Part shown: one piece after another, positions 18,901-60,790 of the stretch
Numbering within the stretch: position 1 is the first letter of the stretch
How the letters are laid out: each line of letters begins with the position of its first letter
NCBI RefSeq assembly: GCF_964204865.1
Contig: NC_135258.1
Location: 21,204,001-21,268,000, forward strand
DNA: 64,000 nt
Origin: Styela clava
Lineage: Eukaryota
Reading direction: 5' to 3'
Made by a program: the position numbers and the translations under genes
The notes under the pieces: model-generated
Database searches by the model: none
Told to the model about the DNA's origin: nothing
The model's input: the letters and a program-made list of their open reading frames with translations, nothing else

Positions 18901-21900
18901 ATTCAAGAACATTCTTCATCATTTACCATCGCTATCTAATTAAAAAATATAACAATAATACAACAGCTCCAGAATGAATGTTTATTTCAAGTTTCAATCG
19001 CTGTTTCAACAAAACTGTGTTACTCATATTGCAAAGTGAAATTTGTTAAAGAGTTGGATATGATTATGTTGGCACTGCAGGGTGATTCAAACCCTCCGTG
19101 TACCACTATAGCCAATGCTGAACTGGGAAGTCAGTTGTCCAGATGATTGTTAAAAGTAGAGACATGAAAAAAATTCATAAAAAATTATGTCAGCAGTTGA
19201 ACCGAACCTCGAAATAAAAAGTTCCCTAACCCCACTCGTCTTGGCTTTGAGTTTTTTTCTCAGAAGCTCACTCATATCTGCTTACATCTGAACAAACAAT
19301 CTTCCCGTATACAATTGAGTCACTATAATTTTGTTACAGATATGCAACTGTGAATTATGGCCCTTCATTGTTTGGCTATATGAGAAGGAACACCAGGAAA
19401 GATTAGAGAACAATGGAGAAATAAATCAACATGGTACATGTCATGCACCCATGGATAAGATTGGAACTGATATCACATTTTTAAAAAATTATTTCTGGTA
19501 CATTTCCAAACTATTGATAACATTAAAATATGTTGATAATTGCCTAACATTATTCTGAATCAGTTATACATATATTCTTCATAGGTATGAAAAACCATGT
19601 ATTCAGCATACCTGTGAATGGGACAGAAAATATCCAGACTTGGATTGTTCATACGGCAAAGCAATGGTACTTCCTTGTATTTATACTTCAATTTGCCCCA
19701 TTAATATAAATTTGATATAACATTGGTTATAAACTCAAATATATTTTTTAGGAAATCTCCAAAAACTACACAGATATAATGGGTCAATTGCCGGCTATAG
19801 CACGAAGCGGATATTGGAAGAAAATTAAATTGAGTGGGCTGGGATTGCAAAATACAAAAATAAGATTGAATCATTTGTATGGTTTGATAAACATCAACTT
19901 GTCAAGTAACCCATTAGCTTATATTATTCCACTATTTTTTCACACTAAAATTTATCAATTATCGAAATTGGACACAATTTCAGTGTCTTTCAAGGAAAGG
20001 ATATTAAATCTCAAGTCGAATAATATAATGAATTTTTGCCCGAATTCTTTTTTCTAAAAATTCGTCTTATACCTTATTATTGTGAGAGTTATGTTTCATA
20101 TATTTAGATTTTCGTTGAACACATTTATTTTTAGTTTTTCTTTCAGGGTGCTGACTGATTGAGTGTCATCTCAAATGATTCCCAACAGCGTAATTGCGTA
20201 ATTAAACAGTACTGCAAGCAAATATTAGCATTTTGGAAAACTATGTTCATGTGTCACTAGAAAACTAAACTTGACTGAAGAAATAGGAGTTTGTTTCATT
20301 TGACTTAACCAGTTTTCATTTCAATATCAAATGCCTCCAGAAAGTGACAAAGTTACATGCCACTCATATTTTGTCAGGAGTTTTTAGCTGAATGAATTGC
20401 ATCTTACTTTGAAGGCTTGCCTCGGAAGGATTGTGACTTTAATCAATTCAACATAAAAAATAATAAGCACTGCTAACTTTTTCAGATAATTCATTGAACA
20501 GTTTTCCTCTTGTTGGATTACCTGGTACTGTGCAAAATCTGACTTTAAAGAACAATAACATAAGCTCACTGCCAAGTATTGAAGGCATAAAGCGGCATCT
20601 GCCAGATTTGAAATATCTTGATCTGCAGAAGAACAAATTAACGTATGTATTGGAAAATAAAAACTTAAAACAATGTATAATACTATATTTTCACATTAAA
20701 GTTTTATAATCCGGAATGTCTTGTTTACACAGATCATTGAATGAACACGATGTCCAATTGTTCCCGCTGCTAACGAAATTTCTGTTACATCAAAATCCAC
20801 TGGTTTGTGACTGCAAACTAAGACCGTTTGTGGCATGGATTGCAGCAAACCATGACAATCCCAGTGTTATGAGAAGTCATGAATTAGAGGTAATTGGGAG
20901 CACACGGACAATAAATAACTTTTGTTCTGAAAATCTTTATGGGGAAATTTTCAATAATAAGGCATCAGATAGAATGGATGCAAAAGGTTCAGCATATTCG
21001 CAGTGACACAAATACCGTATTTTCCAAGTAATAGGTCTATAAGTAGAGGTCAATTTGTAAAACTAAATATCAGGGTTTTTCTATATTATCGTCGAACAAG
21101 TCAGGGCAGAAAAAATTGGTTACTTTGTTTTTCCGTTTGTCAGAGCACCAATATGCGCTTATAATTTAATATGGCTATTTTGTAAGTAAAATCATGTTTA
21201 TTTCATCTCTTGTAAAATCATTTCCATGGAATTCACTATTCTGCCTAACAAAGCCATATTCAGCATTAAAAGGGTAGCTTGGAGCGTTGCAATATTCTTT
21301 TAAAAAGAATGAAGTCAAAACACAGTATAAAGTCAAATACCAGTAGCTATTGGAAGACCGTTTAGCATCGAATACATTTTAAAATATATCCTACTCAGAG
21401 ATAATTAAGCTAGAGAAGGCTAATGCAAAAAAAAAAGCTAACCACAGAAAAAAACACAGGCCCAAGTCAACCAATAAAATGACCCCTGAAAATCAGGTCC
21501 AAATATTGAGTCCAGAAAATCGTCTTACGGTAAAAAAATATGGTATGTGATACTTTGCTGATTTAAAACGAATTGCAAAATGTTGTCTGCTATTATTTTA
21601 TCTTGCAGTATCCAAATTGTTCACTTGGTTTTCAAATGGTTTTCACTTTGTTTCCAGTAGATTCTCTCAAAAAACTTGTTCCTATGGCTTGCAACATACT
21701 ACTGAGAACTAATCAAATTGAAACCCCAAATCATACCTAAAACCTATATTATTTATTTTGGCAGAGACTGACATGCTATGCTCCATGGAACTTAGCAGGT
21801 GACTTAATCATGAATCTTACAGAAGCGAAATATTGTCCAGATGTCAACGTTGGTGTGATAAGTGGTGGATTGGTTGCTGGAGTGTTGTTTCTCATTGTCC

Positions 21901-23941
21901 TAGCAATTGCATGCAATATATACATGCACAGAGTAAGCTGAATTATTCTTATAATGTATAAATGATGATAAATCTAGAGCTATTTTTTATGTTTTCTGAA
22001 AAAAAAAGCAGATAACTGACAGTTATTCAAAATGTTAATAAACAATGGGAAATTTAAAAAATGTGGATTATATCAATAACAACTATTTTTCGAGAAATGC
22101 AAGATTCGAGAAAAAGAAGCCATATTGCAAGGTTTTCGAGAATTATTACAGCAGGAAGCTGGATTTGATGACACCGATCCTGAAACTGGGGTGAACATGA
22201 TTGAACCTACAAGATTTAAGTATGATGCATTCGTATCTTATGCACCACATGAAGAAGACACAGAATTTGCAATGTGGCTTCTGGATGTGAGTAATAGTTC
22301 ACAAATACAGTAATGAAAAGTATGAATACAATACATCCATTTCAAAAGATTTATTGGCTATGTACAAAGATTGCTTTAGTCAAGTGTATATAGTAGAAGT
22401 AGTATATAATAGAAATTATTAATTTATCTTGAGAGCATTATGTCTCACTTCTCACTTGCAATGTATAATATTTAACACCGCCACAAAAAACCCAATTTTA
22501 TGTTTTTTGGTTGTTTCTGTATACAATTGTTTATTTCATATCAATAACAGTCAGAATTTTGCTAGTTTCAAATTTATTTCATCAAGTTTGCTTGAAGTGA
22601 GGTCCCTGCGGAGTGCATAGGCTTGCTATATTTAGCTATATACATATATATTAACTGGTGACCGTACATTCGAACCCACGAACATTTGAACCCATGTGTA
22701 TATCCGCGGGTTCAATCTATATGCGGGTGCTAAAACCCATGGGTTAGGGTTAGGATGGGTTCAAATATCCGTAAAACAGAAAAAATTTTCATAGGTGCAC
22801 TAATATGCAGGTGCAATTGTCGTGAGTTCAAATGTACGTGGGTTCAAATGTACATGGGTTCAAATGTAATGGAACCATATTAGCTATATTATACATATCT
22901 AATGTTTTTTGTTTTATATTTGGCAAAAGGGGTGCATGCAGCACATTTGTGTTTTAGGCCAATAGGTCTTGTGCATGCATCCCGTCTTAAATAATAATAT
23001 TTGTCAATTTATTTATTTATCACTATTACGAAACGAATAAACATACATACATTTTTTTGTGTATGCCGCCTTTCATAAAATCACAAAAAGTCATATGTTT
23101 AAAACAAAGCTTGGTACTGATAACCAATTATTATTCGGATGAAAGCTCACATCTGAATTAATTGTTTATTCTTGAATTATATTTATAATTACTTTGACTA
23201 CAACCAACAAGAATATACTATTTTACTCCACAAAAAATTCAATATACTCACACAAAACTTTACAGAGAAAACTCATAAAATTCAAAATAAAATTATTTCA
23301 GGAGTTGGAGATTGAACAGAACTATAAGCTATGTGTACATGAGAGGGATTTTGTCCCAGGAACTGGTATAGCAGATAACATTGTGGAATGTATCGGTGCA
23401 TCAAAGCGCATTATTCTAATTTTATCAAACCATTTTGTAACAAGTCCATGGTGTCAATATGAAGTTCAAATCGCACTTACAGAGCTCCATCAAAAGAGGA
23501 AAAGCAAACTTCTTGTACCTATTTTGCTGGAGGTACGTATGATTGTAAACCCAATAAGAATTTGATAATATTCTTAACATTGCAAATCCTCAAAAGCTAT
23601 TCAGTGAAGCTTAATATTCAAGAAAAATCCATTACATTCCAGTAAAAACCTGATTCTCGATTACTGTTGGAATACAGAACTGAGATAAAACTTAGTTAAA
23701 AATACTATTTTTAATGATTCTAAAAACAAGTATCTACAGAAAGTTATCTTATTTACTCTTTGCTGCATAATTTCACTTTCAGGAACTGGATGGAAAAGTA
23801 GAAGGAAGTGTAAAAACGTTTTTATCATTGATAAAAGGTATAAGAATACCACATAACCAGAGTCATTCTCAGTGGACTGTGTTCTGGAATGAAATTAAAG
23901 AAGCAATGCCAGAAGAACCAATTCAAGATAGCATTGTATGA
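12901..23941 (+). CDS. Toll-like receptor A (multi-cysteine-cluster type), ~1104 aa, 17 coding exons
   Basis: Exons 12901-13010, 14684-14796, 15002-15121, 15291-15403, 16200-16888, 17705-17958, 18252-18468, 18630-18870, 19340-19497, 19585-19666, 19752-19905, 20486-20642, 20733-20889, 21765-21932, 22095-22286, 23302-23532, 23783-23941 (3315 nt, in frame). LRRs present; LRRCTs NPWACN, NPLICNC, NPLVCDC; TM VISGGLVAGVLFLIVLAIACNIYM; TIR YDAFVSY / CVHERDFVPG / SPWCQYE / FW. Confidence 0.88.
13324..14518. mobile_element. Non-autonomous hAT DNA transposon in TLR-A intron 1
   Basis: TIRs caggggcgcagacag / ctggctgcgcccctg; perfect 8-bp TSD cactcaca (13316-13323, 14519-14526); internal inverted repeat ~13829-13870 / ~13966-14009; a partial second copy lies at 51157-51994. 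Confidence 0.9.
16057..16129. repeat. Near-perfect palindrome (36-bp arms, 1-nt loop)
   Basis: gaaattgaaatcgaataaattgatcatcctaatttg-g-caaattaggatgatcaatttatttgatttcaatttc, with one mismatch. Confidence 0.9.
17240..17510 (+). repeat. Dispersed repeat, copy 1 (TLR-A intron)
   Basis: Colinear similarity to ~60420-60790 (ccccgacctt..gaaaaattcttcct.tactttaccattgcaaaatttt..; aattaaa.taaaactc; tctgtctgag). Confidence 0.7.
21015..21543. mobile_element. Tc1/mariner-pogo (Tigger-like) MITE
   Basis: TA|ccgtattttcc ... aaaaaatatgg|TA termini with TA target duplication. Confidence 0.6.
22657..22877. mobile_element. Small foldback MITE-like element with central GGGTTAGGGTTAGG
   Basis: Terminal inverted repeats tggtgaccgtacattcgaaccc / gggttcaaatgtaatggaacca; tandem acatt(c/t)gaaccc and gggttcaaatgt subterminal units. 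Confidence 0.6.
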
Positions 23942-30994: not shown

Positions 30995-32881
30995 TAATAT
31001 TAATCACATATCTTTTCAAATGTCTATAATGATGCAATTTAATTTATTCCTATCTTGTTCCTATCTATTCTGAACAAGCAATAAAACTTGATATTAAAAG
31101 TGCTTAAGACCTATTTTCAACAATTAAAAAAAAGTGCTATAGACTAGAAAATCAGTCCGAGGATAGAATCTAGTTTTCATTTTCAGCATGCAAAACAAAA
31201 AGCATAAAACTTTAGTCTAAAAATTCAATTTCTGATGATGAAATTTACCTGGCAATTGTTTCAGTCGTATTTTATCCTGAATGATTCTTATAAGGTATAA
31301 TCATTATGGAATACTCATACCTAAATCTACACTTTTATGAAATTGTGATGACAGGCTAGATGGTAGATTTAAAAAAATAATTATATTGTATATAACCACG
31401 CTGTTGGAAAAGTAGTTATTTCTGATTATTATTTTACTGAAAAGTTTCACAGTCATACAATGAAATTTCGACAACCACTATATGGATTAGGAAAAAACAG
31501 GTATTGTGCAATATGGAAGAAATCTAGATAGACTCATTTTTCCACAAGTAAAAGAGTTTTTAGGTAATTGCAACACATTAGAGTGTACTTGTGCTGAATA
31601 AATAGATGAGGGGTCAAAGAAATGAACGTCTTTACCAGAATAATAAAAACTGATGTAAAATATTTCGAAATTTTTGAAAAAAAGCTAGTGTCAATCACAC
31701 AATGATGATAGAAATATTATGAAACAATTATACAATTTATTAAAAAGTTTGAAGTTTCTTTGAAACAAATACAATTAAAACGTTTTATCAAAATGCATCT
31801 GAAAATAATATTAATTCACTAGAACAAGTTACAGATATCAATATTAGGATTTGGTTGGGGATACTGTAATCTCTGCCAAGTAGCATTTGGTTGAGAGGTA
31901 AATAATTTTTTAGCGTTTCCAAGACAAAAAATATCAAGTAATGTGGTAGGAATGGTTTTTATTCGATATACCTGGATTCAGGAATGGTATAAAAATCCAG
32001 TATGAATCATAGTGGAGAAATGTGGACCAAAAAGGGTTCCTATCCCTTCCCCTAGGCCATTCTAACTTATTAAGCTAATACCCACTCTGTTTACTGGCTT
32101 ATCGATACATATTTGTAAACTAAACACTAACTTGAAATTTTAGCCAAGTATTAGGAAGTAATTTATCTATGATAGGACAGAAAAGGCGAACCACTAAAAC
32201 GAGTTTGTAGATGAACAAACAGTAGTGCATATTTAAAATATTAAGTAGGTGAAGATGACTGGCAATATGATGAATTCCAAATATGGTTAGATCAAGGATT
32301 AGACGAAAGTGAGCATGGCAACTGGAAGCGGACGCATGAGTAAATTCAGAAAAAATCTATAATACATCACGTTTCAGAATTGATAGGTGCACTTTACACA
32401 TATGATACTTAAGTGATGTAAATATGCAAAATAAATTCACTAATATATATGAAGCTTATAAAAGCCTTCAAGTTCTATCAATTGCTGATCACACGACTTA
32501 TGCACTATGTTGTTCAAAAACTGTCCTTACTCAATTTGTGACTACAATCATGTGCTATTAATAGATATTTCCTGTAAGTTGCGAGCAGCCTGGCAACCAT
32601 TGTGCAAAATTGTAACCCAGAACTCTATATAAGAGGGAATGTGCAGAAATATCAAGATTATGAAGGAATTTATTATTGCCTACAAATACATGAAATTCCT
32701 TTACTTTAGCTGATATTAAATATCATTCATAAATGTAGTGAATTGGAGTCTAAAGTTCCAAAAATTTGAATTGAGTTCTTTATTATAACCTATTATTTAT
32801 ATATTACTTCACACATTAACCTTTGATTTGTTTTGTAATTTTTTAAAGCATATTTTCAATTTATAATAAATGTTAAACTCA

Positions 32882-35800
32882 ATGAAAATCTCAGTATCAA
32901 AAACCTGTATACAAGTTTATGCTGTTGCTTTATTTTTATTAATCAACCTGAAAGATCTGCAGGCTGCGAGCTTGTGTCCGGAGATACAAGGATGCCGGTG
33001 AGTATCCAGTTATTCATTCAGAGGTGGTGAAAAATTTGCAAATTCAACTCAAATGATTGCCAATTTGTTTCAGATGCTCAAAGGATTCTACATCTTACGG
33101 TGAAACAGATACAGCAGACGGAACAATGAAGATAAGTTGTTCAAGTGTGACAGATCCTAAACTGCATCTCATGCCGCATGAAAACATCACACAGCTCATT
33201 CTGTCCAGTAAGTTGGTTCTATCCATTTTATTTTCAACTTACTGCATACACCCTAGTATGTTACCATAATATATAGATATAATGACAAAATTTGACTAAT
33301 ATAAAAACAATGCGGTTCAAATATGTTTACAGGAGTAACAATTGCTAACTTATCTATCCTGGATGAACTACGTAAAACAAAGCTCAACAAACTTAGTCTT
33401 TATCGAAACAATTTTGGAGAAACTGCAGTCTTCACTTGGAAATGGATACCAGGTACCAAACTACCATTATCATCATGAATGAATTTGGAAACAAATTTTG
33501 TTCAAGTAAATCATTATTCATTTACCGCCAAGAGATGCACAAAATTTTAACCAAGTGTTATGTACATATAAGGCAACAAAAAAATATTAAGGATACTGTG
33601 AGCATTCCGATATAATTCTATATTTTAGAAGTCTTTCAGACCAAAACCACCAATATTTTCATACTTTCAGATTCGATTACAACTATTTCATTATCAAGAA
33701 ATGGATTCATAAATTTTGCGAATGGTGAAGAGGATTGCAACTTTACAAGAATGAAGAATAATTTGACGATACACATATCAGATGAAAAAATTTCATTATT
33801 ATCATTGTGCTTACCTGAAAGTACAACAAAGCTATCAATTTCTAATATACAACACAGTGGAAAACAGGAAACAATAGAGATGACGGAATGGCCGAGAAAT
33901 ATGAGCATATTGTTGATGAGTAGAATCACATTGGATCATAAGCATAAACATCTTTTCCAATCAATCCCAAGCACATTGAAGACGATGATATTCAAAGAAG
34001 TAAACATTAATAATATTAGTTGGGCAGAGCATTTTCCATCACATCAGTTAACAAGCTTAACCTTACAAAATTGTAGGTTAAGGGAAACATCCTCTGTACT
34101 GATTCCTTTAATGAAAAATGCAGTAAACTTGAAGTATTTATCACTTAGTAGAAATCAATTCAAGCAATTACCAAGTTTACTTTCAACGTCAATCGAGCAG
34201 CTTATTATTTCATACAACGAAATATCTAATGTGGACGAAACTGTTTGGAAAGAATTCCCGAATTTAAAGCAGCTGAATCTGAGACACAATCGATTGTCAG
34301 TAGTACCAGTTGGAATGCCGTCAACACTTCAGAATATCGATCTCGGATACAATCAAATAGAATACAGTCTTTCTTCAGCTTTCAGCTCAATGTACAATCT
34401 CACTTCTTTGGATTTGTCTAACAACATGTGAGTAACCTTTGATATTAAAATACAAACGTTAAAATAGAAAAATATTTATTTTCTGAATTTCCTTTATATT
34501 TTCACATTTGTTAAGACTAGGAGTGGCCAATATAACTTATCTTAGGAGTTATATCTTGTTTCATCTAAAAAACTACAATCTACAATTTAACGAAAGCCTA
34601 CAAATATCTTTGCTATTTCGTGAAAAGAGATGATTATGTTATTCTCATTTATCAGTTTATTACTACCTAGTTCAGGCATCCTTGTGGTGAGAGCCACAAC
34701 AAATCCAACACCCTAGCACTCCTCAACCTAGAGCACTTACATGGAAGATATTTTGAATCCTGCATATTCAACTACTCAAATGACAAATCTACATTTAAAT
34801 AATTTCTAACTTTGAAAGATTCACAACATTGTATAAAAATAAATGTATTCCAAATGTCTTTCCCCGATCCCTGGTTAATTGAGCATAGATATCTGATTCT
34901 ACTTTTCATGACACGTGGTCGTGCACTATTATATGCATACACTATTGTAAATTCTCGTACAATATACTTGTCAGGTTGGAAACATTGCCGGAAGGAATTA
35001 CACAAGGAATACAAGTTTTGTTTCTTCAAAATAACAGAATTTATACAGTCAACAATCCACAGAAATATAATTTCTGCAAATACTGTAAGATAATGGCTTT
35101 AGACAACAATCCTTGGATTTGCAATGTTCAAACCATACTGATGTTCTCATGGTTGAAAATGCATGAAATCAACACAGGATATTTATCAACAAGAAGTCAA
35201 ATTTGCAAACCACAACCTGGAGGTAAGGTTAAGTGATTATTTACCATTGAATGTTGTTAACTGTGAATACTTTTATAATCCAAATAATCATGATTAACAT
35301 GGAATCTATTGTTACTAAGAATTGGACGAACATTTTATTTACGAAACAATGGAGTATCTGAAGTACATCAGCAAATTCAACAGCAATTGTTCATACACTG
35401 TGGACTCGTTGAAATGTGTCAATGCAGGACTGAACAAAGCTCCAGATACATTGCCAGCTCATCTCAACAAAATCAGCATCACTGGGAATCCAAACTTGTC
35501 CCAATTTCCAGATAATTTGTTTTATGCACAGAATAAACTAAAAGAGTAAGTACGGTAATAATTTTAGTGTAATACATAAAAGAAGAGGGAGGGTTATATT
35601 CAAAATATTCAATCACAATCCAACAGTGATACTGTAATTTTATTACATCCCTCTCCATCCTTCTTGATCAATGCTTTAGTATATCTTTTGCTGAGCTGTA
35701 GGCCTACTTATAATTTTAAATAAAAGGCATTAACATTCAGTTACTTAAATCTATTCTAGGTTATTTTTGGACCACAACAACCTCACAAATCTGCCATTTG

Positions 35801-37204
35801 GGCTTCCTAGCCAACTTGTCAAGCTTAGTATGATCGGAAACAGAATCGGGGATTTCACACAAAGAGACTTGGCCACATTGAACAATTTAACATCCTTGCA
35901 ATTCCTCAACATCAAAAACAATCGTATCAAAACATTGCATGCCTGGCAATTCGAAGCTTTGCCAAACTTACAGTGGATTGAGTTGGCTGAAAACCAGTTG
36001 GTAAATCCTAAATCACATAATTTTATTTTTTGCTTCTACATTAAATACTCCCTGTAGATATCATTGTTATACAACATTGCATGAGAGTTTCATGAAATCA
36101 TAAATGTATTCAGATATGTGATTGCAACCTTCTATCATTTGTGACATGGTATGGAAAAATGGCGCCAAGAGGAACGAACCAAATTACTATGAGTTACCCA
36201 ACTTGCTCATTACCTGCTGATGTCAAAGGGAAGGATATACGCCAGCTTTATGGATACTATTTGTGAGTATGAAGACATTTAAACTTTAAAGTATATGAAC
36301 AAAAATGAACAAACAACAATCAGTAAATCAAATACACAAGGGATATTGCATATTATAAGACAACTAACAAAAAGTTATCAAGTACCTATTTTTTCATTAA
36401 GATATAAGTTACAATGTGTGCCTTCTGAATGCAGTTGGGATGGACAATCAGGATTATTGGACTGTTCTGCAGAATATCAAGTTAGTCAAAATTGAAATCT
36501 TTGTCTAAATTTGAATCCAAAATTTTGACATATATTTCTTCGGCAACTAAGAATACTGCATGGATTTAAATATTACCTATGCCAAATATCATCAAATTAA
36601 TTTAACCTAGGTAACTACGAAGACAATCTTAAAGTCAAAACCAAAGGCAAATTTTCATCATGCACCAGTAATTCCACCAAGCTCACAATGGACTTCATTG
36701 AATTTGAGTGGACTGAAACTAAATAATAGCCAGATTCAATACGAACATCTCACACAGCTGAAAACGATAAATTTATCAGGTAAGAAAGCATACAGAACTA
36801 TGAAGTATTAATCACACCACACAATTTACAAAAATAATTCAAATCTTTAATACCTTTACAGACAATGACTTGACGAAAATACCAGTTGAAGGATTGCCAA
36901 AAAGTATTAAGAATGTTCAAATGAATGGTAACCCAATTGCAAATGCTCCCAAAACAAAGAATAAGTCATGGATGAAATTGACCTCACAACAGATAATTAG
37001 GTAGGTGCTTAAAATTAGAATACCAATTCCCTGTATAGCCTCCCTATGTAGCCTACTGTACATCACAATATTCACATTATTCAATGTTACAGAAAATTGA
37101 AGAAAAAAAGTATGCAGCTGTATCAAAAAAGAAAACAAATTTCTAATATATTGAAGATGGTTGAAAAGAGACTGCTTTCACTTCAGCACCGCAAGAATAA
37201 CTAA
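32882..37204 (+). CDS. TLR-like LRR protein C lacking TM and TIR (candidate secreted form), ~829 aa, 12 coding exons
   Basis: Exons 32882-32997, 33074-33207, 33333-33452, 33671-34427, 34975-35222, 35320-35545, 35760-36000, 36114-36262, 36402-36480, 36611-36779, 36862-37000, 37093-37204 (2490 nt, in frame). Signal peptide MKISVSKTCIQVYAVALFLLINLKDLQA. Exons are homologous to TLR-D exons 1-11. No TM or TIR exons were found before the next paralog starts at 38830. The last exon is the least certain. Confidence 0.78.
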
Positions 37205-38511
37205 TATCCACAGGAAAAAAGGGTCCATGCACGCTAAGAGTAACATTACATCGAACACAATCTGCCACTATTCAGTATTCAGATGTTGATTTCTAAGTAA
37301 TATAGCATGGAATATACTTTTATTCATTATTGGCAAACTTACATGGCTAATATTGTCAGTAAAAGTTGAAGAATAACATAATGAAACGATAAATTAAACA
37401 AAAAATATTCAATTGTTATACAAGGCTTCTTGAAATGGTCTGATATATATATATAAAAAGATTATAGCAATATAGAAAAATATACGCAAAAAAGAGTATT
37501 AGTTATCAAAAGAAATGGGACCCAAATGTATTATTGCACAGCAAAAAAGTTCCGCCCATTAATTTTTCAAATAATTGAAAAGAAGATTTTTTTTTATAAA
37601 CCAAGATTGTTTGTCCATCTTTTCTATTTTCAAACCATATAACAATATCATATACCGGAAACAATTTGTATGTGTTAAAATATTAGCAATAAAGCATTGG
37701 ATACAAGAGTTGTATATTGATATTAATAAATATGATCTTGGAAGTTTTTGCGAGTTTTTTTAACCAAAGATAACAAAAACCCAACTGACTGCAAAATGAT
37801 CACTGGTATGAGGATAGAAACTCTGACACACCTAGAAGTAAATACCAGTATATATATATATTTAGTTCTCAGTAAATATTGTTTGTAGATACAATACTTG
37901 AAACTATACAAGGCAACACTGTCAGGAAAATAGCTGAGTGAAAATGATCTCTAAAATGTTGCGTTGACTATAGGGTGTTGAGGTGTTCAACCTAACAAAC
38001 AAGAAAAAATCATAGTTCGAATTGAAATGTTGTGCTCCTACAGTTGCAGGTTTTACTATTGCCATAAGATCAGGTTTCATCGTATAGAAACTAGATTAAA
38101 TGGGAAAGCGCGAGCAGGAAGTAATAGTAAACCTAATTTCCCTTCTAAATAGCAGTGATGGTGACACACTTCGATTGTGATAAGAATTAGCAAAGAAAAA
38201 GGTGATAGTTTCTAGTAAGACTTTTGAACAACTTTGTTGTACATGTACGATATCAAAATATAGTCTGGAAAAACTTTCAGGCCCTTATAATAAAGTTAAA
38301 TATTTTCATGTCACACTGAATGGAATTTAAATTTTTTTTGAATTTATCAAAATTTTAGATACAAATATAAACTAAGCTCATAAGAAAATTCACATAAAAA
38401 TTAATAGCAAAATTTTACACCTGCTATTGTTTCAAATCACGAGTGATTATAGATCATGTATTCCCATTTCTAATTGAGTAGTATTTTCGTTAAGCGACAA
38501 TAGACAACAGA

Positions 38512-38518
38512 TGACTCA
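38512..38518. promoter_or_regulatory. AP-1 consensus TGACTCA upstream of TLR-D
   Basis: Exact 7-mer ~310 bp 5' of the ATG; may be chance. Confidence 0.2.
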
Positions 38519-38829
38519 TTTTCCTGATAAAGTGAACTTCTTGGACTCATTGATGCGATGGCTCATACAGTAGAAACCCTATAGAAACCATATGTTAAGG
38601 TGCAGAGTTACATTAATAACAGTCAATGTCTACGATAAACAACAATATACCAGTCAAGTCAATTATTTATCATATGTTGAAGCAAAAAATTGAAATTTAT
38701 TGTTATGAATTAAGACTTGAAAGGTACTGGAAAGAGTACTGGAGAATTAAGATCACTCTGATGTTATCTTTAATTAGCTTTAGTTTTTTTTACTAATTCA
38801 GATAAAGTTTGATTGTAATATAGACAGTG

Positions 38830-41800
38830 ATGGAATTAATTTTAAAACGGACTTGGATATTTGCAGTGTTCATAAGTATCAACATTCTTCATCTTCATGG
38901 TGCAATCAACAAATGTCCGGGTATAAAAGGATGTGTGTGAGTTATTTTGCATTTCGCAATATTTATACAGAAGGCTATATAAACAATATTTCTTATATTA
39001 CAGGAAATGCTGATAACTTGAATTAGTTTTTATGCAACTATTCATTCCTCATCAAAGGCTTCAATGAAAAATAGGCAGAAATCACGAAATATTGAAAAGT
39101 GGACAACTTTTGTAAAACTTAATTGCCCAAATAGATTAATTTTCACTTGGATTTATTAGGAATTGTAAAAGCTTATTTGTAAATGTTTTTTCACTTGTAT
39201 TCGTGTATATACACATGCCTGTATTCGATTTATACAAAACACTACAAGAAAACGTTGCAAATTAACTAGATTCAACAACAGTACGCGGTTTCGAATAATT
39301 TCCTAAATACAATTACAGGTATACAACATCCATTTTAAATGGATCAATGTAACAGGTGATTGGTGAGTCGAATTAACATCATTAACTTATATTTAATATA
39401 ATTGCCAACTACAGGTGTGACAGGATCTGGAGTAGGGATGGTATTCGATTCAGATGTAGTGAAGCAGAAGATCCACCACTTCATCTCATACCACATGAAA
39501 ATATAACATCGATTTTATTTATAAGTAAGTGTTTTATATTAATACAACATTTCAATGCAAAGTAAAACATGACAACAAATGTCAATTTTTCAAACATTTG
39601 ATTCAGGATCAACTTTTCACAATATATCAGCAATATATGAACTACGGAAAACTAATGCAAGGAGAATATCGTTAATTGAAAACAAGTTTGTACACAAAAA
39701 AATGACTTCGCTGAATTGGAACTGTATGCCAAGTATGTTGTTATTACTGGTACATCAAATCTTTTGAATAGTAAGCTTTATATGAAATCCTACAAGTTTT
39801 ATCAGTAGTTTTTAACAGAAAGAAATGATATATATTTATATAAACTGTGATTTATTGTAATTTATCAATACTTCTAATCAGCACAATAAATACTCTCTAT
39901 ACCCAATGAGCTCCATTCAAGTAATGATGGTGTGAATTGAATCAAGCCAAACGTTCAATGTTCATAATTACCTCAATATATTATGGTAAATATTGTTTTT
40001 GCAGGCACAATATTCAATATTTCTGTATCAGAAAACGGCTTTGATGGATTCACAGATGGAAATAAAACGGGAATGGCATGTAGACTACACAGATTTAAGA
40101 ACAATATCACATTGCAGATAAGAGGGGAAAATATTATAGGAATGCCAGAATGCATACCCGAAAGTACTAGCACCCTCATTCTCAACAATATGCCTGCAAG
40201 CAATGAAACTCAACCTGAAGTAAAATGGCCGGAAAAGATATCCCTATTAAAAATAGTTGGAGGTGGAATGAAAAATTTTTCTAAAGCTTTTGCAGATGCA
40301 CCCAGCTCCTTGAAACGAATATGGATACATAACGGCATTCTTGATGAAGGGAAATGGCCAACAGGATTACCAGCAAACTTCGTAGAAAAGTTGATCCTGA
40401 CCCATTCAAAAATGCATACCATTTCATCTACGGAAATGAAAAGATTTCAGAAAGCTAATAAATTAAATACACTCATCTTGAATTATAATAATTTGAAAGA
40501 CATTCCAAAAGATCTCCCCTTATCATTGATCAACCTACAAATGTCTCACAACAAAATCTACCAAGTGTCACCAAAAAACTGGGAAAATTTGTCAAACCTG
40601 AAATTTTTAGATTTATCTAATAATCTTCTGGTGATGGTACCAAGACAAATGCCTTCTACATTACAAACATTATACTTCCATGGAAATTTGATAGAATTCA
40701 GTGACCCAGAGGCTTTCATTGCAATGAAAAACTTGGAGGTACTTGATCTGTCAGATAACAAGTAAGTGTATTTGATAACCAATAACAATCATTAGCTTTA
40801 CAAACTACCCAGTATGGACAAAATCACGTTGACATATTGGCAGAATAACTTTCAATAACGCTCTAAACATCCCTAAAACACCCCTGCAGTGATGACCAGG
40901 ATAAATTTTTCAAGATGAATTTGATCAAATCTTAGTTTTTCACACAACAGCAGATAACTTTATTTTACTTTTTTACAATCAAGGCTATCATCTATGCCAA
41001 GAGGAATCCAGCCTGGAATACAGAAATATTTGATCACCCACAATCAAATATCAATTGTGAACGGGCCAAGTGATTACAACTTCTGTACAAGTTGTTCAAT
41101 ATTCCAACTGCAAGCAAACCCATGGTATTGCAACACACAAATGCTGCAAATGCTCAGTTGGCTGATAAGTCACGATATCATAATAGGAAGTTCAGGGTTT
41201 TATGAAAAAAGTGACACAGAAAATGTTGCTTACTGCAGTAAAATTCCAATAAAAGGTGAGTCCTCAAAGTTGTCAAGTCTGCAACACCAACTTAGTTAGG
41301 CCTATTGGACTAACTACTTGGACAGGCGTGGGAATCTGCAAAAAACTACCGTAATTAAATTCCATTGCAGGTATTGATATATACTGGCTGAATGTGGCAA
41401 TTGAATACATGGAATATATCAAGCAACCACCAAACGACAAATGCATCTATGAAATCGAGTATTTAACTTGTCAGGATGCGGGTCTAACATCAGTGCCAGA
41501 TCAAATTCCACCAAACTTGGAAAATGTGATAATCTCAGACAACCCAGATCTGACATTTATACCCGATGACAAATTCAAAACACAAACTGAATTGAAAAAG
41601 TAAGCAAGACCATGTTTAAATAACTATTTGACGATTGGAAACATAATGATGGCAATCTTCAACATTTCGAATCTTTTCTTTCAGATTAATTTTAAACAAT
41701 AACAGTATCAGCCACATTCCAATTGGTTTGCCAAAATCATTGATAATGCTTGAATTGAGAGACAATGAGATTGGGAACTGGAATTCAAAAGATTTGAGAG

Positions 41801-44800
41801 CACTGCAGAACTTGACAAATTTAAGACAAATATATCTTGAAAACAACAATATAAGTGTACTTTACGCTTATCAGTTCGAAGGACTGACAGAGATGAATTG
41901 GGTTGGATTGAGCAGAAATCAACTGGTAAAATACATGATAAATTGACTCTGTAATATATTAAATCTCCAAACAAAGCCTCAGACAAAACAGCAAGAAAGA
42001 TTGTGAAAGGTTACAAAGAAAGCAAAAAAACTTTACATGCATAATTTCAATGATACTAATACACACTTTATCACACAGCATTGTGACTGTTCCCTGCAAT
42101 CCTTTGTTATCTGGTTTAATGACATAGCACCAAGAGACTACAAGTTTGTCGGGCCTTCATTTCCTGAATGTAGTTCACCAGTAAGTCAACAAGGTATGGA
42201 CATCCGCCATCTACATGGACATTTCATGTAAGCTTCATTATACCGAGCAATTAAATAGGATATAATGAATCAGCGTAGTATTAGTGCTAAACAGTGCCGC
42301 AATCGAATAACTCAAACCCTTAACCGATAAACTTTGAATTGCAGTGGCGCGGAAGTTCAGTAATACCACAAAGCAGAAATTGAGTATAACAAAGTTATGA
42401 ATCTATTATATTCATAACTAGCAATATCTAATTAAACAATTAATATTGAATCATTCCTTTCCACCATAGAAAAATGAAAATCTTCTATTCTATACCTCAA
42501 TGATAAGAATTATTTCAGATATGGAGTGCAATGCGCACCAATTAGATGTGAATGGAAAAGCAACAACCGACCAATACTGAATTGTTCAAGGGCTTTTCTG
42601 GTAATTACTTGAAGAAAATATAAATATGGAGAAATTTAACAATGTAAAAAAAACATGTAACAAGATGCAATTATAGAAACCACTTTTATATATCATAAGT
42701 GACATAAATATGCATATGACATATCAAGTATAGCAAAGCCCAAGTCGCTTGAATCGCTTATCTAAATTTTCCAGTAATAATAGAGATAGCAACTAAGCAT
42801 ATTTGTATTTAGAATGATGATTCCATTAATACCTACAAACCCCCATATGAAGAAGGAATTGCTCCCGTTATTCCAGAAAACAGTTATTGGACAAGTTTGG
42901 ATCTAAGTGGATTGATGCTGAAGGATGACCAAATTCAATACAGCCATCTAACAAGGTTGATGTCGGTCAACTTATCAGGTATCACTCAATCAAGTTAAAT
43001 GAAATGAAATTCCACTTATTTCAGATGAAATACCGGTAAATTGGATAAACATAAAATTTCTTATGCAACAACTCAAAAACCAAAGAACCACTCAAAAGAA
43101 AATTTACCGTTGTTTTTCCTTTTAAGATTTGATGATTGATAAGGCTTAAAATACACAAAATATTATTTCTTTCTCTAGAAAATTCTCTCACACAAATACC
43201 TCTGACTGGATTTGGTCCATCCGTGCAAATTATGAACTTATCTCGGAATTTTATCGAACATCTGCCATCGACACAAGAATTCAAGAAATATTTTCCAAAG
43301 ATTAAGTCACTGGATTTGAGCAAGAACAGAATCAAGTATGTAGCGATAATGTCCAAATCAAACCAAATAGTCTTAAGCAGTTTTCAAATACCACGACCCC
43401 GCCAAATATCGTTGTAAGTGTTAATCAGAATAATATCGAATCGTTGACAAATGCACATATTCACACTCACTTATATTTAAAACATTTTACCTTGCTCCAA
43501 TTGGTCTTATTTTCTAGGTTTGCATATATATTTATAATACAATATAACTTATAATATATACTGGTAATTCCCTATTCTCAGATACAAGAAAAATTCAAAT
43601 TTCAATTATTTCACACATATCTTCACTACGAAAGTCTACGATGAAGCATTATTAAAGCTTAATTACTGTTCAGTTGGTTTTTAATAAACTGAAATGTGGT
43701 GTCAAATTTCATAATGTGTTAATGAATGAATACGATAAAGAAAATACAAAGTGCTGTTCTACAAAATGTACAAAAAAATAGCAAAAAACAAGTGGCAGTC
43801 AAGAAACTGCATTGACATCAAGTATATGATTCATAGCAGGTATCCTTGGAAACTACTTTCGTTAATTTGAATGAGAAAACGTCAGCCAGCATGACTTAAC
43901 ACTTGAAATATTACTCATCGATAATTAAAGTTAAGCAACATTGCAATTTTATAGACACCTTGATTTTGTGGAAGTTGGAACATTGGAGTTCGTAGATACC
44001 TTATTGCTGACCGGAAATCCTTTCATTTGCAACTGTTCACTTAGAACATTAGTTGAATGGATTCATGTGAACAAAGAAAACACCAAAATGGTGCGTCAAC
44101 ATCAGTTACAGGTCAGTTTGATCAAGAATGATTCATATTTCATACATCAGTGGTTCGCCTTTCCTCTGCCCCAGGATAAATATGTAACTGAATGAAGCTT
44201 GCGATTAGCAGTGGCAAAACTACAACTGGTAACCGTTGCATGATTTTCATTGAGAGACAGAGCCTACCAGAAGGTCGTACTACATTCCCATTGTACTTCT
44301 AAACATTTCACCAAATTCTCACCTTTTTCTAAATGTTTAAAACAACATTTCAAAATATTAATTGAAAATATTGAAATCAATTTCTTTGGGCTTGTTTCAC
44401 TCGTAAACCTACAATCTTATTATAAACATGTCGAATAAGCTAGCGGAGAATTATAATCCAGTTGGTTTTATGTCTGGTGACATGCGGAGTTCTAGAGGTA
44501 ACATTGTGGAAGCCCAATGGAGTCTTGCTGGTTTAATAACCAGAGAATTTTTTTTTTCAAGGAATTAACTTGTAAAACAAGTCAACGAAGAAACGCAAGA
44601 ACATTGCAGATAATGTCAACTAAAGATGAAGAGTATTGTCCTGAATTACCAGTAGTGACGATCATCATTAGCATACTATCATTCATACTCATCTGTGTCA
44701 TAATCGTGTTTATTGTCCATGTTTATATGCAAAGAGTAAGTAGGAATTTGTTTATCAGAAATATTTTTTAGTTTTTTTTCAGTGGTTTACCAATTCCTAA

Positions 44801-45978
44801 GGAAGTTTGTGGGATTGTTAGAGTAACGAGCATAATAAGCACCTTTTGTATTCTATCTCATGTCACATACTAAGGAAAATTCTGAAATTTGCCGAATGGA
44901 ATCTACTTGTCAACTTCAAGTTCAAAGTTTGCCCAACTCAATAAAGCATTAAAATCAATTGAAAAATGATATTAAAATCTGTTTACAGCAACGAACCAAA
45001 AAAATACATGAAGAAATACTGCTTGGGTTCCAAGGTTTACTGGAAAAGGAAATAAAAGAAGGTGAACGAGATCCAGAAACAGGCATGGGATTGGAAAAAG
45101 AATTGAAATTTGATGCTTTTGTTTCCTATGATGCTAATGGAGCGGATGCTGAATTTGTAATGACACTTCTAGAGGTAACAAGTGACCAAATTATGTTATA
45201 TAACTTTATTCAATGTTGTCCTGAAATTCCTTTGCTTTTGCTTAAATTAGGATTTTAGGATGCAACACTACTGATATGATTGCAAACTTTGTAAATGTAA
45301 TTGGTTGTTTTCATAATGTGGATTGTACGACATAGAAATAAATATCAGCACAGCCTTGATTAGAATATGATATTTAGTCAAAACCAGGAAATATCCTTTG
45401 TTAAGGAACTGGAAGACAAGCGAGGATACAAGCTTTGTCTGAATGAAAGAGACTTTATGCCTGGTGCTGGTATCACTGACAACATTGTTGAATGCATTGG
45501 AACATCCAAACGTATTATCTTAATCTTATCAAGAACATTTGTGTCAAGTCCGTGGTGTCAGTATGAAGTGCAAGTTGCATTAGCTGAACTTCATCATAGA
45601 AGAAAAAGTCAGCTACTCATTTCACTTCTTCTTGAGGTATAAATTAATTAATTTACTCATAATTTAAAGATGATTTAAAGTAATATTACTACCGCTCAAT
45701 CTATTGATTAACCTTAAACACCATGGTTTTCAATAATAGAATATCAGTACAAATTTAATTTAATGAACAACAAGGTAATGACATAAACTCAAAACAAATA
45801 TAAAAACATTTTACAGGATATATCAAGTGATGAAAACCTTGCCAGCAGCGTGAGAACATTTTTGTCATTGGTTCCAAGTATACCTGTTCCTGCTTACACA
45901 GCAAATGATAATGAAACTTGGAAAAAGTTCTGGAGAGAATTATTAAACATGATGCCAAATCCATCTAATATCATTTGA
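38830..45978 (+). CDS. Toll-like receptor D (multi-cysteine-cluster type), ~1101 aa, 16 coding exons
   Basis: Exons 38830-38936, 39415-39524, 39607-39732, 40005-40761, 40984-41255, 41371-41599, 41685-41925, 42079-42227, 42519-42600, 42813-42978, 43179-43335, 43955-44111, 44562-44735, 44989-45174, 45406-45636, 45817-45978 (3306 nt, in frame). Signal peptide; LRRCTs NPWYCN, NQLHCDC, NPFICNC; TM VVTIIISILSFILICVIIVFIVHVYM; TIR FDAFVSY / CLNERDFMPG / SPWCQYE / KFW. Confidence 0.9.
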
Positions 45979-59433: not shown

Positions 59434-60419
59434 TTCATTTCAACTCCATAATCAGCATAACAATAAAATAATTGCAAAAAAAAAAAAAATGATTATGAAG
59501 ATGAAGTGAGAGTTTATCACTAGAATCAATCAATCAATCATTTTATTTCGGCTCTCTGACTAAAACGGGACAATACAAAAAAGTAAACAGACAACAAATA
59601 CAGAGATACCTGGAAGGCGAGCATAACTTAAAATAAAGTTAAAAAACGTACAAGTACGAGCCCACCCACCAAAAAATAAAATAGGAATAATACGAGTATA
59701 CAAAAAATATGGACACGATTCAAAATCGGGCAGTGCTTATAACTCAATTTAAAATGATAAAAGCCAAATAATTGTTTGAATCAGTGAATAATTTACATGG
59801 AGTAAAATAAGAGTTGCGCTTGAAATAAGACAGCAAGATTCAAGTAGATAAAACTAAATGTAATAGAATCCCAACCACCTCCTCCGTTTCTGATAAATGT
59901 TTCAAATGTTCTTATACGATTATGGTAGCTGAGAAATCGCCAGGATTCTGGGATTAGCCTTGCAGTAAATATATATAAATAAAGCTGATCTCTCTCGAAT
60001 TCTGTAAATTTTGAGTCTGAGATTCCTATATAGCATAGAAATATACAAGTCAAAATTTATGGGAGATACCGGTATCGCTTGCTGTCAGAAATGCAAAAAA
60101 TCACCAAAAAACTATCAAATGTGCAAGACAGATAAATAAATAGGCTACATGTTTGAAAAGCAGCATGAAGTTTTGAATCATTAATATCGTGTTGACTCAG
60201 TCACTACCTCAATACATGTCCAGTATCATTACTTCAGCTCGAAAGGGACAACTGTAAAACCTGAATGAGGGAAAGTTTTCTAGGGAAACGGTAACCAGAT
60301 GCCACGTCCATTCCAGTGACCCACACGCGCGCGAAAACAGTGGGGATTTCCCTTGTTTTATCATAGCTTCACCCTTGGCTTCACCTAACGGTCAATTTGT
60401 CGCGCTCAAGATATGGACC

Positions 60420-60790
60420 TTCCCCCGACCTTTGATCACCGAAAAATTCTTCCTGTACTTTACCATTGCAAAATTTTCGGGGCTATTTTAAGAGTGCTTC
60501 TGCGAGTTGACGCCTGTAAAATGGGGTGTGTTTTTCAACCCATCATTACGATTCATCGCATACAACAATCCGTTTTTTAAAAGTACCGGTGAAGAAATTT
60601 AGCCTAGTCTTTCACAGCTATTTCTACACTAATTTTTCCATACTGCAATTAAATTAAAACTCCTAGGAAGACAGAGTGATCATTGAATTATCTGATTTAT
60701 ATTTAAGTTTCCGAAACAAAACTGAAAACCAACGATGAGAGTTCAAAAACGAGGTAATGTTTACGACCACGCTTGAAAATCTGTCTGAGC
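60420..60790 (+). repeat. Dispersed repeat, copy 2 (homologous to ~17240-17510)
   Basis: Colinear shared blocks with the TLR-A intron copy. Confidence 0.7.

What the first reader, a model, noticed from the sequence alone, without database searches (positions are those of the whole stretch)
32882..37204. Genomically encoded soluble TLR paralog embedded in the receptor cluster
Seen: intact signal peptide, 11 exons homologous to the neighbours with no stops or frameshifts and canonical splice sites, but no third LRRCT, TM or TIR exon in the ~1.8 kb before TLR-D. Exon sizes make it closest to TLR-D. Known: soluble TLR ectodomains (e.g. fish TLR5S) act as amplifiers or decoys. Inference: a maintained secreted pattern-recognition or decoy partner of TLR-D, forming a paired receptor/soluble-sensor system.
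Basis: partly seen in the sequence, partly recalled or inferred. Interest (0 to 1): 0.78.

Follow-up and report, generated by a model that had tools for sequence, protein, structure and literature searches.

The report
Secreted TLR-derived gene in sea squirt
A sea squirt (Styela clava) carries, inside a row of four Toll-like receptor genes, an expressed copy that keeps the sensing part, has lost the membrane anchor and signalling domain, and ends in a short, strongly positively charged helix, so it most likely makes a free-floating immune sensor or decoy.

Summary
Eleven exons are collinear with the three full-length TLR genes beside it, in the same intron phases. A twelfth exon encodes a new 36-residue polybasic tail and the stop codon.

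Spliced RNA contigs from 4 runs in 3 studies show all 11 GT..AG junctions. They also show the gene's own 3'UTR reaching about 37830, and no junction to TLR-D. No exon has a transmembrane-grade hydrophobic stretch apart from the signal peptide. Profile searches find no relic of the third LRRCT, TM or TIR exons in 37205-38852 above shuffled controls.

The organism is Styela clava, and the family is the Ciona TLR2 (CiTLR2) type. RefSeq holds only a 207-residue "uncharacterized" fragment of S.

S is nearest to TLR-D (39% identity against 30-32% to the others). It shares 17 of its 20 cysteines with D and has changed about 1.3-1.5 times as fast as D.

Best reading: a gene-encoded soluble TLR paralog, analogous to fish and lamprey TLR5S but of independent origin. 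Secretion, ligand binding and any partnership with TLR-D are untested. Selection evidence is suggestive only (pN/pS 0.51, p = 0.07). Moderate interest.

The parts
32870..32997 (+). S exon 1: start codon, signal peptide and first two cysteines of the N-terminal cap
   Evidence: ATG, GT donor, 2 trailing bases. The highest 19-residue Kyte-Doolittle mean in the gene, 1.86, lies here. Junction 32997|33074 is found in 4 of 4 runs. P0001 starts with the same residues.
33074..33207 (+). S exon 2 (N-terminal cap, first LRR)
   Evidence: It is 46% identical to D at 39431-39544. The junctions on both sides are found in 4 of 4 runs.
33333..33452 (+). S exon 3 (LRR)
33671..34427 (+). S exon 4 (757 bases, main LRR block)
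   Evidence: Pfam LRR_4 at 1.7e-13 and LRR_8 at 1.2e-12. It is 34% identical to D exon 4 at 5e-38. The inferred D exon 4 has the same size. Junctions.
34975..35222 (+). S exon 5 (LRR plus first C-terminal cysteine cap)
   Evidence: three cysteines are shared with D, B, C and CiTLR2.
35320..35545 (+). S exon 6 (second N-terminal cysteine cap)
   Evidence: Intron 5 is found in 3 of 4 runs, plus a fitting loose end in the fourth.
35760..36000 (+). S exon 7 (LRRs)
   Evidence: Pfam LRR_8 at 1.9e-09.
36114..36262 (+). S exon 8 (second C-terminal cysteine cap)
   Evidence: three cysteines are shared with all four relatives.
36402..36480 (+). S exon 9 (third N-terminal cysteine cap)
   Evidence: three cysteines are shared with D and C.
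36611..36779 (+). S exon 10 (LRRs of the third module)
   Evidence: It is 60% identical to D at 42837-42980. The junction is found in 4 of 4 runs, three of them with a one-letter difference at 36612.
36862..37000 (+). S exon 11, the last exon homologous to the paralogs. Its second LRR is degenerate. Its donor leaves two bases of a split codon, as in the paralogs.
   Evidence: Junction 37000|37093 is found in 4 of 4 runs.
37093..37204 (+). S exon 12, coding part: a 36-residue polybasic helical tail and the TAA stop at 37202-37204
   Evidence: Net charge is +11, above all 271 open 36-residue windows of local non-coding DNA, whose maximum is +9. AlphaFold2 gives one helix over residues 2-35 with pLDDT 97.6. 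It occurs once in the genome. It has no Pfam family and no Atlas hit.
37205..37830 (+). S 3'UTR, the same exon as the tail. AATAAA lies at 37688 and 37725. The end is approximate.
   Evidence: Contigs reach 37830 (X1), 37658 (X4), 37515 (X7) and 37435 (X2). Depth is 0 over 37919-38500 in 4 of 4 runs. Poly(A) signals are. All 4 runs lack 7 bases at 37269.
37831..38829 (.). Spacer between S and TLR-D, with no relic of LRRCT3, TM or TIR exons
   Evidence: The stretch 37001-38850 occurs once in the genome.
38830..45975 (+). TLR-D, the nearest full-length paralog (context and candidate partner). It has a signal peptide, 11 homologous exons, then LRRCT3, TM and TIR exons. Its exon borders are inferred, not checked with RNA.
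   Evidence: Pfam TIR scores 2.1e-17 on 45388-45636. The TM stretch has a Kyte-Doolittle mean of 3.54. The TIR exon is nearest to the TLR1, TLR6 and TLR2 TIR structures.

Best explanation
S is a functional gene of Styela clava. It arose by tandem duplication inside a cluster of CiTLR2-type Toll-like receptor genes and lost everything after the eleventh exon: the third C-terminal cap, the transmembrane helix and the TIR domain. Those parts were replaced by a new terminal exon.

Its mRNA encodes an 833-residue protein with three parts:
- a signal peptide;
- a TLR ectodomain of two complete cysteine-capped LRR modules plus the start of a third;
- a 36-residue, strongly basic, probably helical tail.

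Shown here: the gene structure, the homology, the splicing, the gene's own 3' end, and the absence of TM and TIR.

Inferred: the protein enters the secretory pathway and is released as a soluble TLR-like binding protein. It either captures microbial ligands away from the membrane TLRs (decoy) or hands them to those TLRs (amplifier, as reported for fish TLR5S). The basic tail would replace the lost cap of the LRR solenoid, hold the protein on negatively charged surfaces (microbial envelopes, sulphated tunic or matrix polymers, cell membranes), or do both.
For: Structure:
- Eleven exons are collinear with B, C and D.
- A GT-AG chain of 833 codons carries no stop.
- D has same-phase splice sites at all 11 homologous exons.

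Expression:
- Intron-less contigs in 4 of 4 runs from 3 studies carry the junctions and a 3'UTR to about 37830.
- The stop lies in the last exon, so the mRNA is not a target of nonsense-mediated decay.
- No junction leaves the gene.
- Exon 4 and the tail exon each occur once in the genome, so the contigs do not come from a retrocopy.

No anchor and no signalling part:
- The maximum 19-residue hydropathy outside the signal peptide is 0.82, against 2.72-3.54 in the TM exons of B, C and D.
- No relic of the tail exons lies downstream.

Family:
- CiTLR2 (P0125, NP_001159600.1) aligns with S exons 4-7, 10 and 11 and with D's tail exons 12 and 14-16.
- The TIR exon of D matches Pfam TIR at 2e-17.

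Maintenance:
- 17 of 20 cysteines are shared with D, and one more is shared with C and CiTLR2.
- There are 15 N-x-S/T sequons.
- Relative-rate counts of S-only against D-only changes are 66:51, 64:42 and 64:46.
- None of the 30 listed differences in the coding exons makes a stop, and the 3 indels in the RNA contigs all lie in the 3'UTR.

Tail: charge, helix prediction and uniqueness.
Against: - Secretion rests on a hydropathy heuristic, because no signal-peptide predictor was available.
- The runs are only guessed to be RNA and are kept as assembled contigs. Contigs cannot give expression level, tissue or rare isoforms.
- pN/pS of 0.51 is not significantly below 1 (p = 0.068), and 20 further differences were not listed.
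- No ortholog of S was found, so the age of the truncation and dN/dS are unknown. The representative search was swamped by generic LRR proteins.
- The length limit of the search for homologous proteins excludes 833-residue proteins for a 251-residue query.
- S differs from D at about 60% of residues, which argues against a simple same-ligand decoy of D.
- The tail's helical amphipathicity is not beyond shuffles (19.6% of shuffles reach it).
- A 36-codon open run is not rare in local non-coding DNA (5.8% of runs).
- The maximum-likelihood tree on exon 4 alone does not place S with D.
Confidence: 0.62

Rival explanations
1. Transcribed relic. S is a truncated tandem duplicate that is still transcribed and spliced, but its product has no function. 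The tail is an accidental read into A-rich non-coding DNA.
For: - The polymorphism test is not significant.
- S has changed somewhat faster than D, with p = 0.03 for one of three outgroups.
- The last LRR of exon 11 is degenerate.
- Open runs of 36 codons make up 5.8% of runs in local non-coding DNA.
- No ortholog was found.
- RefSeq models only a 207-residue fragment.
Against: - 833 codons and 11 introns are intact at about 60% residue divergence from the nearest paralog.
- 17 of 20 cysteines are kept.
- The rate excess over D is only 1.3-1.5 fold.
- The tail's charge exceeds all 271 local non-coding windows.
- The indels seen in the RNA contigs lie in the 3'UTR, not in the coding sequence.
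Confidence: 0.2
2. Surface-tethered accessory protein. The product is not free in the body fluid. Its polybasic helix holds it on the cell surface or in endosomes, where it acts as a non-signalling co-receptor of a membrane TLR such as D.
For: - The tail has net charge +11 and a confident helix prediction.
- S lies next to its nearest paralog D.
Against: - There is no hydrophobic segment and no hydrophobic C-terminus of the kind a GPI signal needs.
- Amphipathicity is not beyond shuffles.
- Nothing here tests localisation.
Confidence: 0.13
3. Hidden full-length isoform. S exons also join the LRRCT/TM/TIR exons of D in rarer read-through transcripts, so the locus gives a second ectodomain to one signalling tail.
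For: The exon 11 donor leaves two bases of a split codon, as do the exon 11 donors of C and D. Exon 12 of D at 43955 supplies the missing third base, so such a join would be in frame.
Against: - 4 of 4 runs join 37000 to 37093.
- No junction or loose end points downstream.
- Depth is 0 over 37919-38500.
- D has its own signal-peptide exon.
Confidence: 0.05

Closest known systems
Soluble TLR5 (TLR5S) of teleosts and lamprey
   Same: It is encoded by its own gene, derived by duplication of a membrane TLR, and lacks the TM and TIR parts. It is reported to augment NF-kB activation by flagellin together with membrane TLR5. Sources: passages of PMC6043800 and passages of PMC12816324.
   Different: - S belongs to a different TLR lineage. 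It is CiTLR2-type, and the TIR of its paralogs is nearest to the TLR1, TLR6 and TLR2 structures.
- S arose independently, in a tunicate.
- S has lost the last C-terminal cap and gained a new polybasic tail exon.
- No function has been tested for S.
Ciona intestinalis TLR2 (CiTLR2, NP_001159600.1)
   Same: CiTLR2 aligns collinearly with S exons 4-7, 10 and 11 at 28-48% identity. The ectodomain has the same cysteine-capped modules.
   Different: CiTLR2 has TM and TIR parts (Pfam TIR at 6e-20). S has neither.
TIR-less 'CiTLR3, -6, -7' of Ciona robusta
   Same: These are tunicate LRR proteins without a complete TIR domain that have been discussed as possible soluble TLRs (PMC12816324: abstract and passages).
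   Different: That paper finds no phylogenetic evidence that they arose from Ciona TLR genes and proposes renaming them as LRR proteins. S, in contrast, is demonstrably a truncated tandem copy of bona fide TLR genes.
Soluble TLR2/TLR4 forms of mammals
   Same: They are TLR ectodomains without an anchor that act as decoys (PMC12816324 passage).
   Different: According to that passage, most of them arise by ectodomain proteolysis of the full-length receptor, not from a separate gene.

Membership tests
Canonical Toll-like receptor | Extracellular LRR solenoid with cysteine caps | tested here: met
   Pfam LRR matches on exons 4 and 7. Cap cysteines are shared with D, B, C and CiTLR2.
Canonical Toll-like receptor | Single transmembrane helix | tested here: not met
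   The maximum 19-residue hydropathy after the signal peptide is 0.82, against 2.72-3.54 in the paralogs' TM exons.
Canonical Toll-like receptor | Cytoplasmic TIR domain | tested here: not met
   No TIR is found on any S exon, no relic lies downstream, and the transcripts end at about 37830.
Gene-encoded soluble TLR (TLR5S-like kind) | Separate gene with its own first and last exons, not an isoform or a cleavage product | tested here: met
   S has its own signal-peptide exon, terminal exon and 3'UTR in spliced contigs of 4 runs, and no junction to D. Rare isoforms cannot be excluded from contigs.
Gene-encoded soluble TLR (TLR5S-like kind) | Descent by duplication from a membrane TLR gene | tested here: met
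   Eleven collinear homologous exons share splice phases with B, C and D. S is nearest to D.
Gene-encoded soluble TLR (TLR5S-like kind) | Secreted into body fluid | not testable with these tools
   The only evidence is a signal-peptide-like N-terminus by hydropathy and 15 N-glycosylation sequons.
Gene-encoded soluble TLR (TLR5S-like kind) | Binds a microbial ligand and modulates signalling of the membrane paralog | not testable with these tools
   No data.
TLR5S orthologs | Orthology to vertebrate TLR5 | tested here: not met
   The best full-length relative is CiTLR2. The TIR exon of D matches the TLR1, TLR6 and TLR2 structures at about 1e-16 to 1e-14, but TLR5 only at 3e-07.
Pseudogene | Stops, frameshifts or broken splice sites | tested here: not met
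Pseudogene | Neutral evolution | tested here: inconclusive
   pN/pS is 0.51 with p = 0.068 on 30 listed differences; 20 more were not listed. The relative rate against D is 1.3-1.5 fold, with p = 0.17, 0.03 and 0.09.

The most novel reading that the evidence does not exclude
The new tail is not a leftover but a functional module. A de novo exon gave a TLR ectodomain a cationic helix that takes the place of the lost solenoid cap and binds anionic microbial or tunic surfaces. This would turn a receptor into a secreted protein that both recognises and sticks to its target, and possibly acts directly on it, in an animal known for cationic helical antimicrobial peptides. That last point is recalled, not tested. 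It would be the first clear gene-encoded soluble TLR outside vertebrates.
Probability: 0.15. Interest if true: 0.75.

Novelty: new variant of a known kind. Interest (0 to 1): 0.5.

Why it matters
Gene-encoded soluble TLRs are so far accepted for TLR5S of fish, lamprey and perhaps amphibians. A 2026 reanalysis of Ciona found no convincing soluble TLR in that tunicate (PMC12816324).

This Styela locus gives a clean case. Parent and truncated copy sit side by side, the splice junctions are seen in RNA, and the product is not in public protein sets except as a 207-residue fragment.

It makes two questions testable in a chordate invertebrate. Did the soluble-TLR strategy arise repeatedly? What does a newly born basic tail exon add to an LRR sensor?

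It also shows that the family is misnamed in RefSeq: gene B is called 'slit homolog 1 protein-like'.

Tried and rejected
1. Relics of the lost exons.
- tblastn and blastn of the tails of B, C and D against 36990-38860 gave only weak hits.
- The best ordered hit was a W-K-x-x-W-like motif at 38677-38763 against the last exon of D (E = 0.012). It did not survive profile HMMs against 100 shuffles, where 39% of shuffles reached the score for that exon.

2. Tail exon as a diverged copy of the paralogs' exon 12 or exon 14. Smith-Waterman against 200 shuffles gave nothing for 5 of 6 comparisons. The sixth (B exon 14, 0.5% of shuffles) lies at 37354-37406 in the A-rich 3'UTR, not in the coding tail.

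3. Transposon origin of the spacer. The stretch 37001-38850 matches only itself in the genome.

4. Ortholog hunt.
- The exon 4 search found only P0001 and generic LRR proteins.
- The representative search returned 11,008 hits, mostly giant LRR proteins.
- The search with the C-terminal half of CiTLR2 found gene B of this window, plus Clavelina and unnamed relatives, but nothing like S.
- The third homologous-protein search was not used.

5. The maximum-likelihood tree on exon 4 alone had 4 of 5 inner branches unsupported. I used summed per-exon counts instead.

6. Tail annotation. Pfam gave only DUF7069 at E = 0.055 and the Atlas gave no usable hit. The hydrophobic moment is not beyond shuffles.

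8. The supplements of PMC12816324 (trees that include three tunicate species) are closed. They may show Styela proteins of this family.
Full report
NAMES. I call the four paralogs B (~16.1-23.9 kb), C (~26.2-31.0 kb), S (the finding, 32870-37204) and D (38830-45975).

1. WHAT IS IN THE SEQUENCE.

The window has no N. Stop-to-stop translation of the + strand, compared with itself by blastp, gives four collinear series of homologous open segments.

For S, phase arithmetic on AG and GT sites gives a single consistent chain:
- exon 1: 32870-32997
- exon 2: 33074-33207
- exon 3: 33333-33452
- exon 4: 33671-34427
- exon 5: 34975-35222
- exon 6: 35320-35545
- exon 7: 35760-36000
- exon 8: 36114-36262
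- exon 9: 36402-36480
- exon 10: 36611-36779
- exon 11: 36862-37000
- exon 12: from 37093, with the stop at 37202-37204

This chain is 833 codons long, has no internal stop, and all introns are GT..AG. The RefSeq fragment P0001 begins at the first.

In C and D the eleventh exon has the same acceptor and donor phases. It is followed by an LRRCT exon, a TM exon and three TIR exons.
- TM exons: Kyte-Doolittle 19-residue maxima are 3.05 (C), 3.54 (D) and 2.72 (B).
- TIR: Pfam TIR scores 2.1e-17 on 45388-45636.

D has an AG and a GT in the same phase as S at all 11 homologous exons. Its inferred exons 4, 7 and 8 have the same sizes as in S, 757, 241 and 149 bases. These D borders are inferred, not checked with RNA.

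2. THE GENE IS TRANSCRIBED AND SPLICED AS PREDICTED, AND ENDS ON ITS OWN.

The look-up of sequencing runs listed 13 runs of one organism. Nine of them hold 0.23-0.37 of the sampled words of 32600-38500, which is about the exonic share.

I laid four of these runs, from three studies, on the stretch. Their contigs lack the introns:
- Junctions 32997|33074, 33207|33333, 33452|33671, 34427|34975, 35545|35760, 36000|36114, 36779|36862 and 37000|37093 are found in 4 of 4 runs.
- Junctions 36262|36402 and 36480|36611 are found in 4 of 4 runs if the rows with a one-letter difference at the border are read as the same junction.
- Junction 35222|35320 is found in 3 runs. A 10-letter loose end that equals the start of exon 6 fits it in the fourth.

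The donor of exon 11 is therefore used. It joins a twelfth exon that runs on without a break to 37435, 37515, 37658 and 37830 in the four runs. AATAAA lies at 37688 and 37725. Depth is 0 over 37919-38500 in all four runs, and no junction or loose end leads towards D.

The runs are only guessed to be RNA, but intron-less contigs with GT..AG borders are spliced RNA. Exon 4 and the tail exon each occur once in the 377-Mb genome, so the contigs do not come from a retrocopy.

Limits of this evidence: these are assembled contigs, so expression level, exact ends and rare isoforms cannot be read from them.

3. WHAT IS MISSING, AND WHAT REPLACES IT.

No S exon after the signal peptide has a hydrophobic stretch above 0.82.

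The 1.65 kb between the stop and the start of D holds no relic of the five tail exons:
- tblastn and blastn give only chance-level hits.
- Profile HMMs built from B, C and D score no better than dinucleotide shuffles. The fraction of 100 shuffles reaching the observed score is 0.28, 0.26, 0.12, 0.50 and 0.39 for exons 12-16.

The spacer is unique in the genome.

The coding part of exon 12 reads KLKKKSMQLYQKRKQISNILKMVEKRLLSLQHRKNN. It has 12 Lys+Arg and 1 Glu, for a net charge of +11. The codon split across the junction adds one more basic residue.

Features of the tail:
- It is more basic than every one of 271 open 36-residue windows translated from the local introns and spacers (mean +2.9, maximum +9).
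- AlphaFold2 on the single sequence predicts one helix over residues 2-35 with pLDDT 97.6. For such a peptide this shows helical propensity, no more.
- It has no Pfam family and no Atlas look-alike.
- It has no detectable kinship to the paralogs' exon 12 or 14 and no second copy in the genome.
- Its amphipathic moment is not beyond shuffles.
- An open run of 36 codons is not rare in local non-coding DNA: 5.8% of runs reach that length.

The simplest origin is exonisation of A-rich non-coding DNA after the 3' part of the gene was lost or never copied.

4. ORGANISM AND FAMILY.

P0001 is Styela clava XP_039263572.1, 'uncharacterized protein LOC120339499', 207 residues. It equals S exons 1-3 and the first 78 residues of exon 4, at 93-100% identity for exons 2-4 in blastp.

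P0170 is S. clava 'slit homolog 1 protein-like', 807 residues, with a TIR domain. It is gene B of this window; most pieces are 93-99% identical, and pieces whose alignments run over intron borders score lower.

The only full-length relative that is collinear with the family's exons is Ciona intestinalis TLR2 (P0125, NP_001159600.1). It matches:
- S exons 4-7, 10 and 11 at 28-48% identity;
- D exons 12 and 14-16 at 43-63%.

The TIR exon of D is nearest to the TLR1, TLR6 and TLR2 TIR structures in the PDB.

No protein holding the rest of S was found in either protein library. The length window of the first search excludes 833-residue proteins for this query, and generic LRR proteins swamp the second.

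5. IS IT MAINTAINED?

Summed over seven separately aligned exons, the identity of S to its relatives is:
- D: 245/623 = 39.3%
- B: 29.7%
- C: 31.1%
- CiTLR2: 31.9%

D is nearest in 999 of 1000 bootstraps. The other pairs lie at 30-35%, so the whole cluster is old and the S/D split is not recent.

Despite this divergence, S keeps an open 833-codon frame and 11 working introns. Of its 20 cysteines, 17 are shared with D and one more is shared with C and CiTLR2.

Tajima-type counts of S-only against D-only changes are:
- outgroup CiTLR2: 66 to 51, p = 0.17
- outgroup B: 64 to 42, p = 0.03
- outgroup C: 64 to 46, p = 0.09

S has thus changed only about 1.3-1.5 times as fast as a full-length receptor.

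Polymorphism in the RNA contigs:
- 30 listed differences fall in the coding exons, 20 nonsynonymous and 10 synonymous.
- pN/pS is 0.51 with one-sided p = 0.068. Twenty more differences were not listed by the tool.
- No listed difference makes a stop.
- The three indels seen lie in the 3'UTR.

Taken together this favours a constrained gene, but the direct test of selection is not significant. The time of the truncation is unknown.

6. MECHANISM.

Shown: a separate, expressed gene that encodes signal peptide, TLR ectodomain (two complete cysteine-capped modules plus the first LRRs of a third) and basic helical tail, without TM or TIR.

Inferred: it is secreted and acts as a soluble binding protein, either a decoy or an amplifier for membrane TLRs. 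Fish TLR5S is reported to augment flagellin-driven NF-kB activation (PMC6043800, passages).

The pairing with D rests only on adjacency and nearest paralogy. With about 60% of residues different, S and D need not see the same ligand.

The tail may cap the open end of the solenoid, anchor the protein on anionic surfaces, or both. This is inference.

Rivals:
- a transcribed relic without function (0.2);
- a surface-tethered accessory protein (0.13);
- a hidden isoform joined to D's tail exons (0.05). The phases would allow it, but no contig shows it.

7. COMPARISON AND NOVELTY.

The kind, a gene-encoded soluble TLR born by duplication of a membrane TLR, is known from TLR5S of teleosts and lamprey (PMC12816324, abstract and passages; PMC6043800, passages).

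For tunicates, that 2026 paper concludes that Ciona's TIR-less 'TLR3, -6, -7' are not shown to be soluble TLRs and did not arise from Ciona TLR genes.

My library searches found no report of such a gene in Styela or any tunicate:
- 'soluble TLR' + tunicate: 1 paper, the same one.
- Styela + TLR + 'TIR domain' + tunicates: 5 papers, seen as listings only.
- 'Styela clava' + 'Toll-like receptor': 48 papers, 20 listed.
- TLR5S + invertebrate: 25 papers, 12 listed.
- 'soluble TLR' + amphioxus: 2 papers.

Subscription journals and the closed supplements are not covered by these searches.

S is not a TLR5S ortholog. It is an independent case in the CiTLR2 lineage, and it differs by the loss of the last cap and the gain of a new basic tail exon. 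I therefore class it as a new variant of a known kind. Interest is moderate, because truncated copies in immune receptor clusters are common and no function is shown.

8. NOT DONE.
- The full spliced product was never joined, searched or folded.
- No signal-peptide predictor was available.

Noticed in passing
window 16107-23938: Gene B, a full-length CiTLR2-type TLR with a TIR exon, corresponds to the RefSeq protein named 'slit homolog 1 protein-like' (P0170, 807 residues, N-terminally short). This looks like a misnaming of a TLR.
   Followed up: partly
window 13442-14407 and 51212-52644: Two + strand stretches share a series of short open segments at 54-94% residue identity. They may be a dispersed repeat or a duplicated gene fragment. 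The first lies just upstream of gene B.
   Followed up: no
window 37149 and 37269: All four RNA runs differ from the assembly in two ways. They carry T>A at 37149, which changes Ile to Lys in the tail and makes it more basic. They also lack 7 bases at 37269 in the 3'UTR. The assembled individual carries a different allele.
   Followed up: partly
window 35055-35090: Four nonsynonymous differences cluster within 36 bases of exon 5 in runs X1 and X7. Contigs of X7 break here with unlike sequence (loose ends at 35079 and 35127). This may be a divergent haplotype at the first C-terminal cap.
   Followed up: no
window 32779-32838: One run (X1) skips 58 bases with TT..TA ends just upstream of the start codon. 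It is not a canonical intron and may be an indel allele in the 5'UTR or promoter.
   Followed up: no
window 38626-38796: An open segment just upstream of D's first exon holds a W-K-x-x-W-like motif that recalls the C-terminus of the paralogs' last exon (E = 0.012). It is not above shuffles.
   Followed up: yes
window 37830 / 36298: A contig of X1 joins 37830 back to 36298, inside intron 8, with one A between. It is probably an assembly artefact at the transcript end.
   Followed up: no
window 17240-17314 and 60419-60493: A short shared open segment, 25 residues at 60% identity, lies between an intron of gene B and the far end of the window.
   Followed up: no
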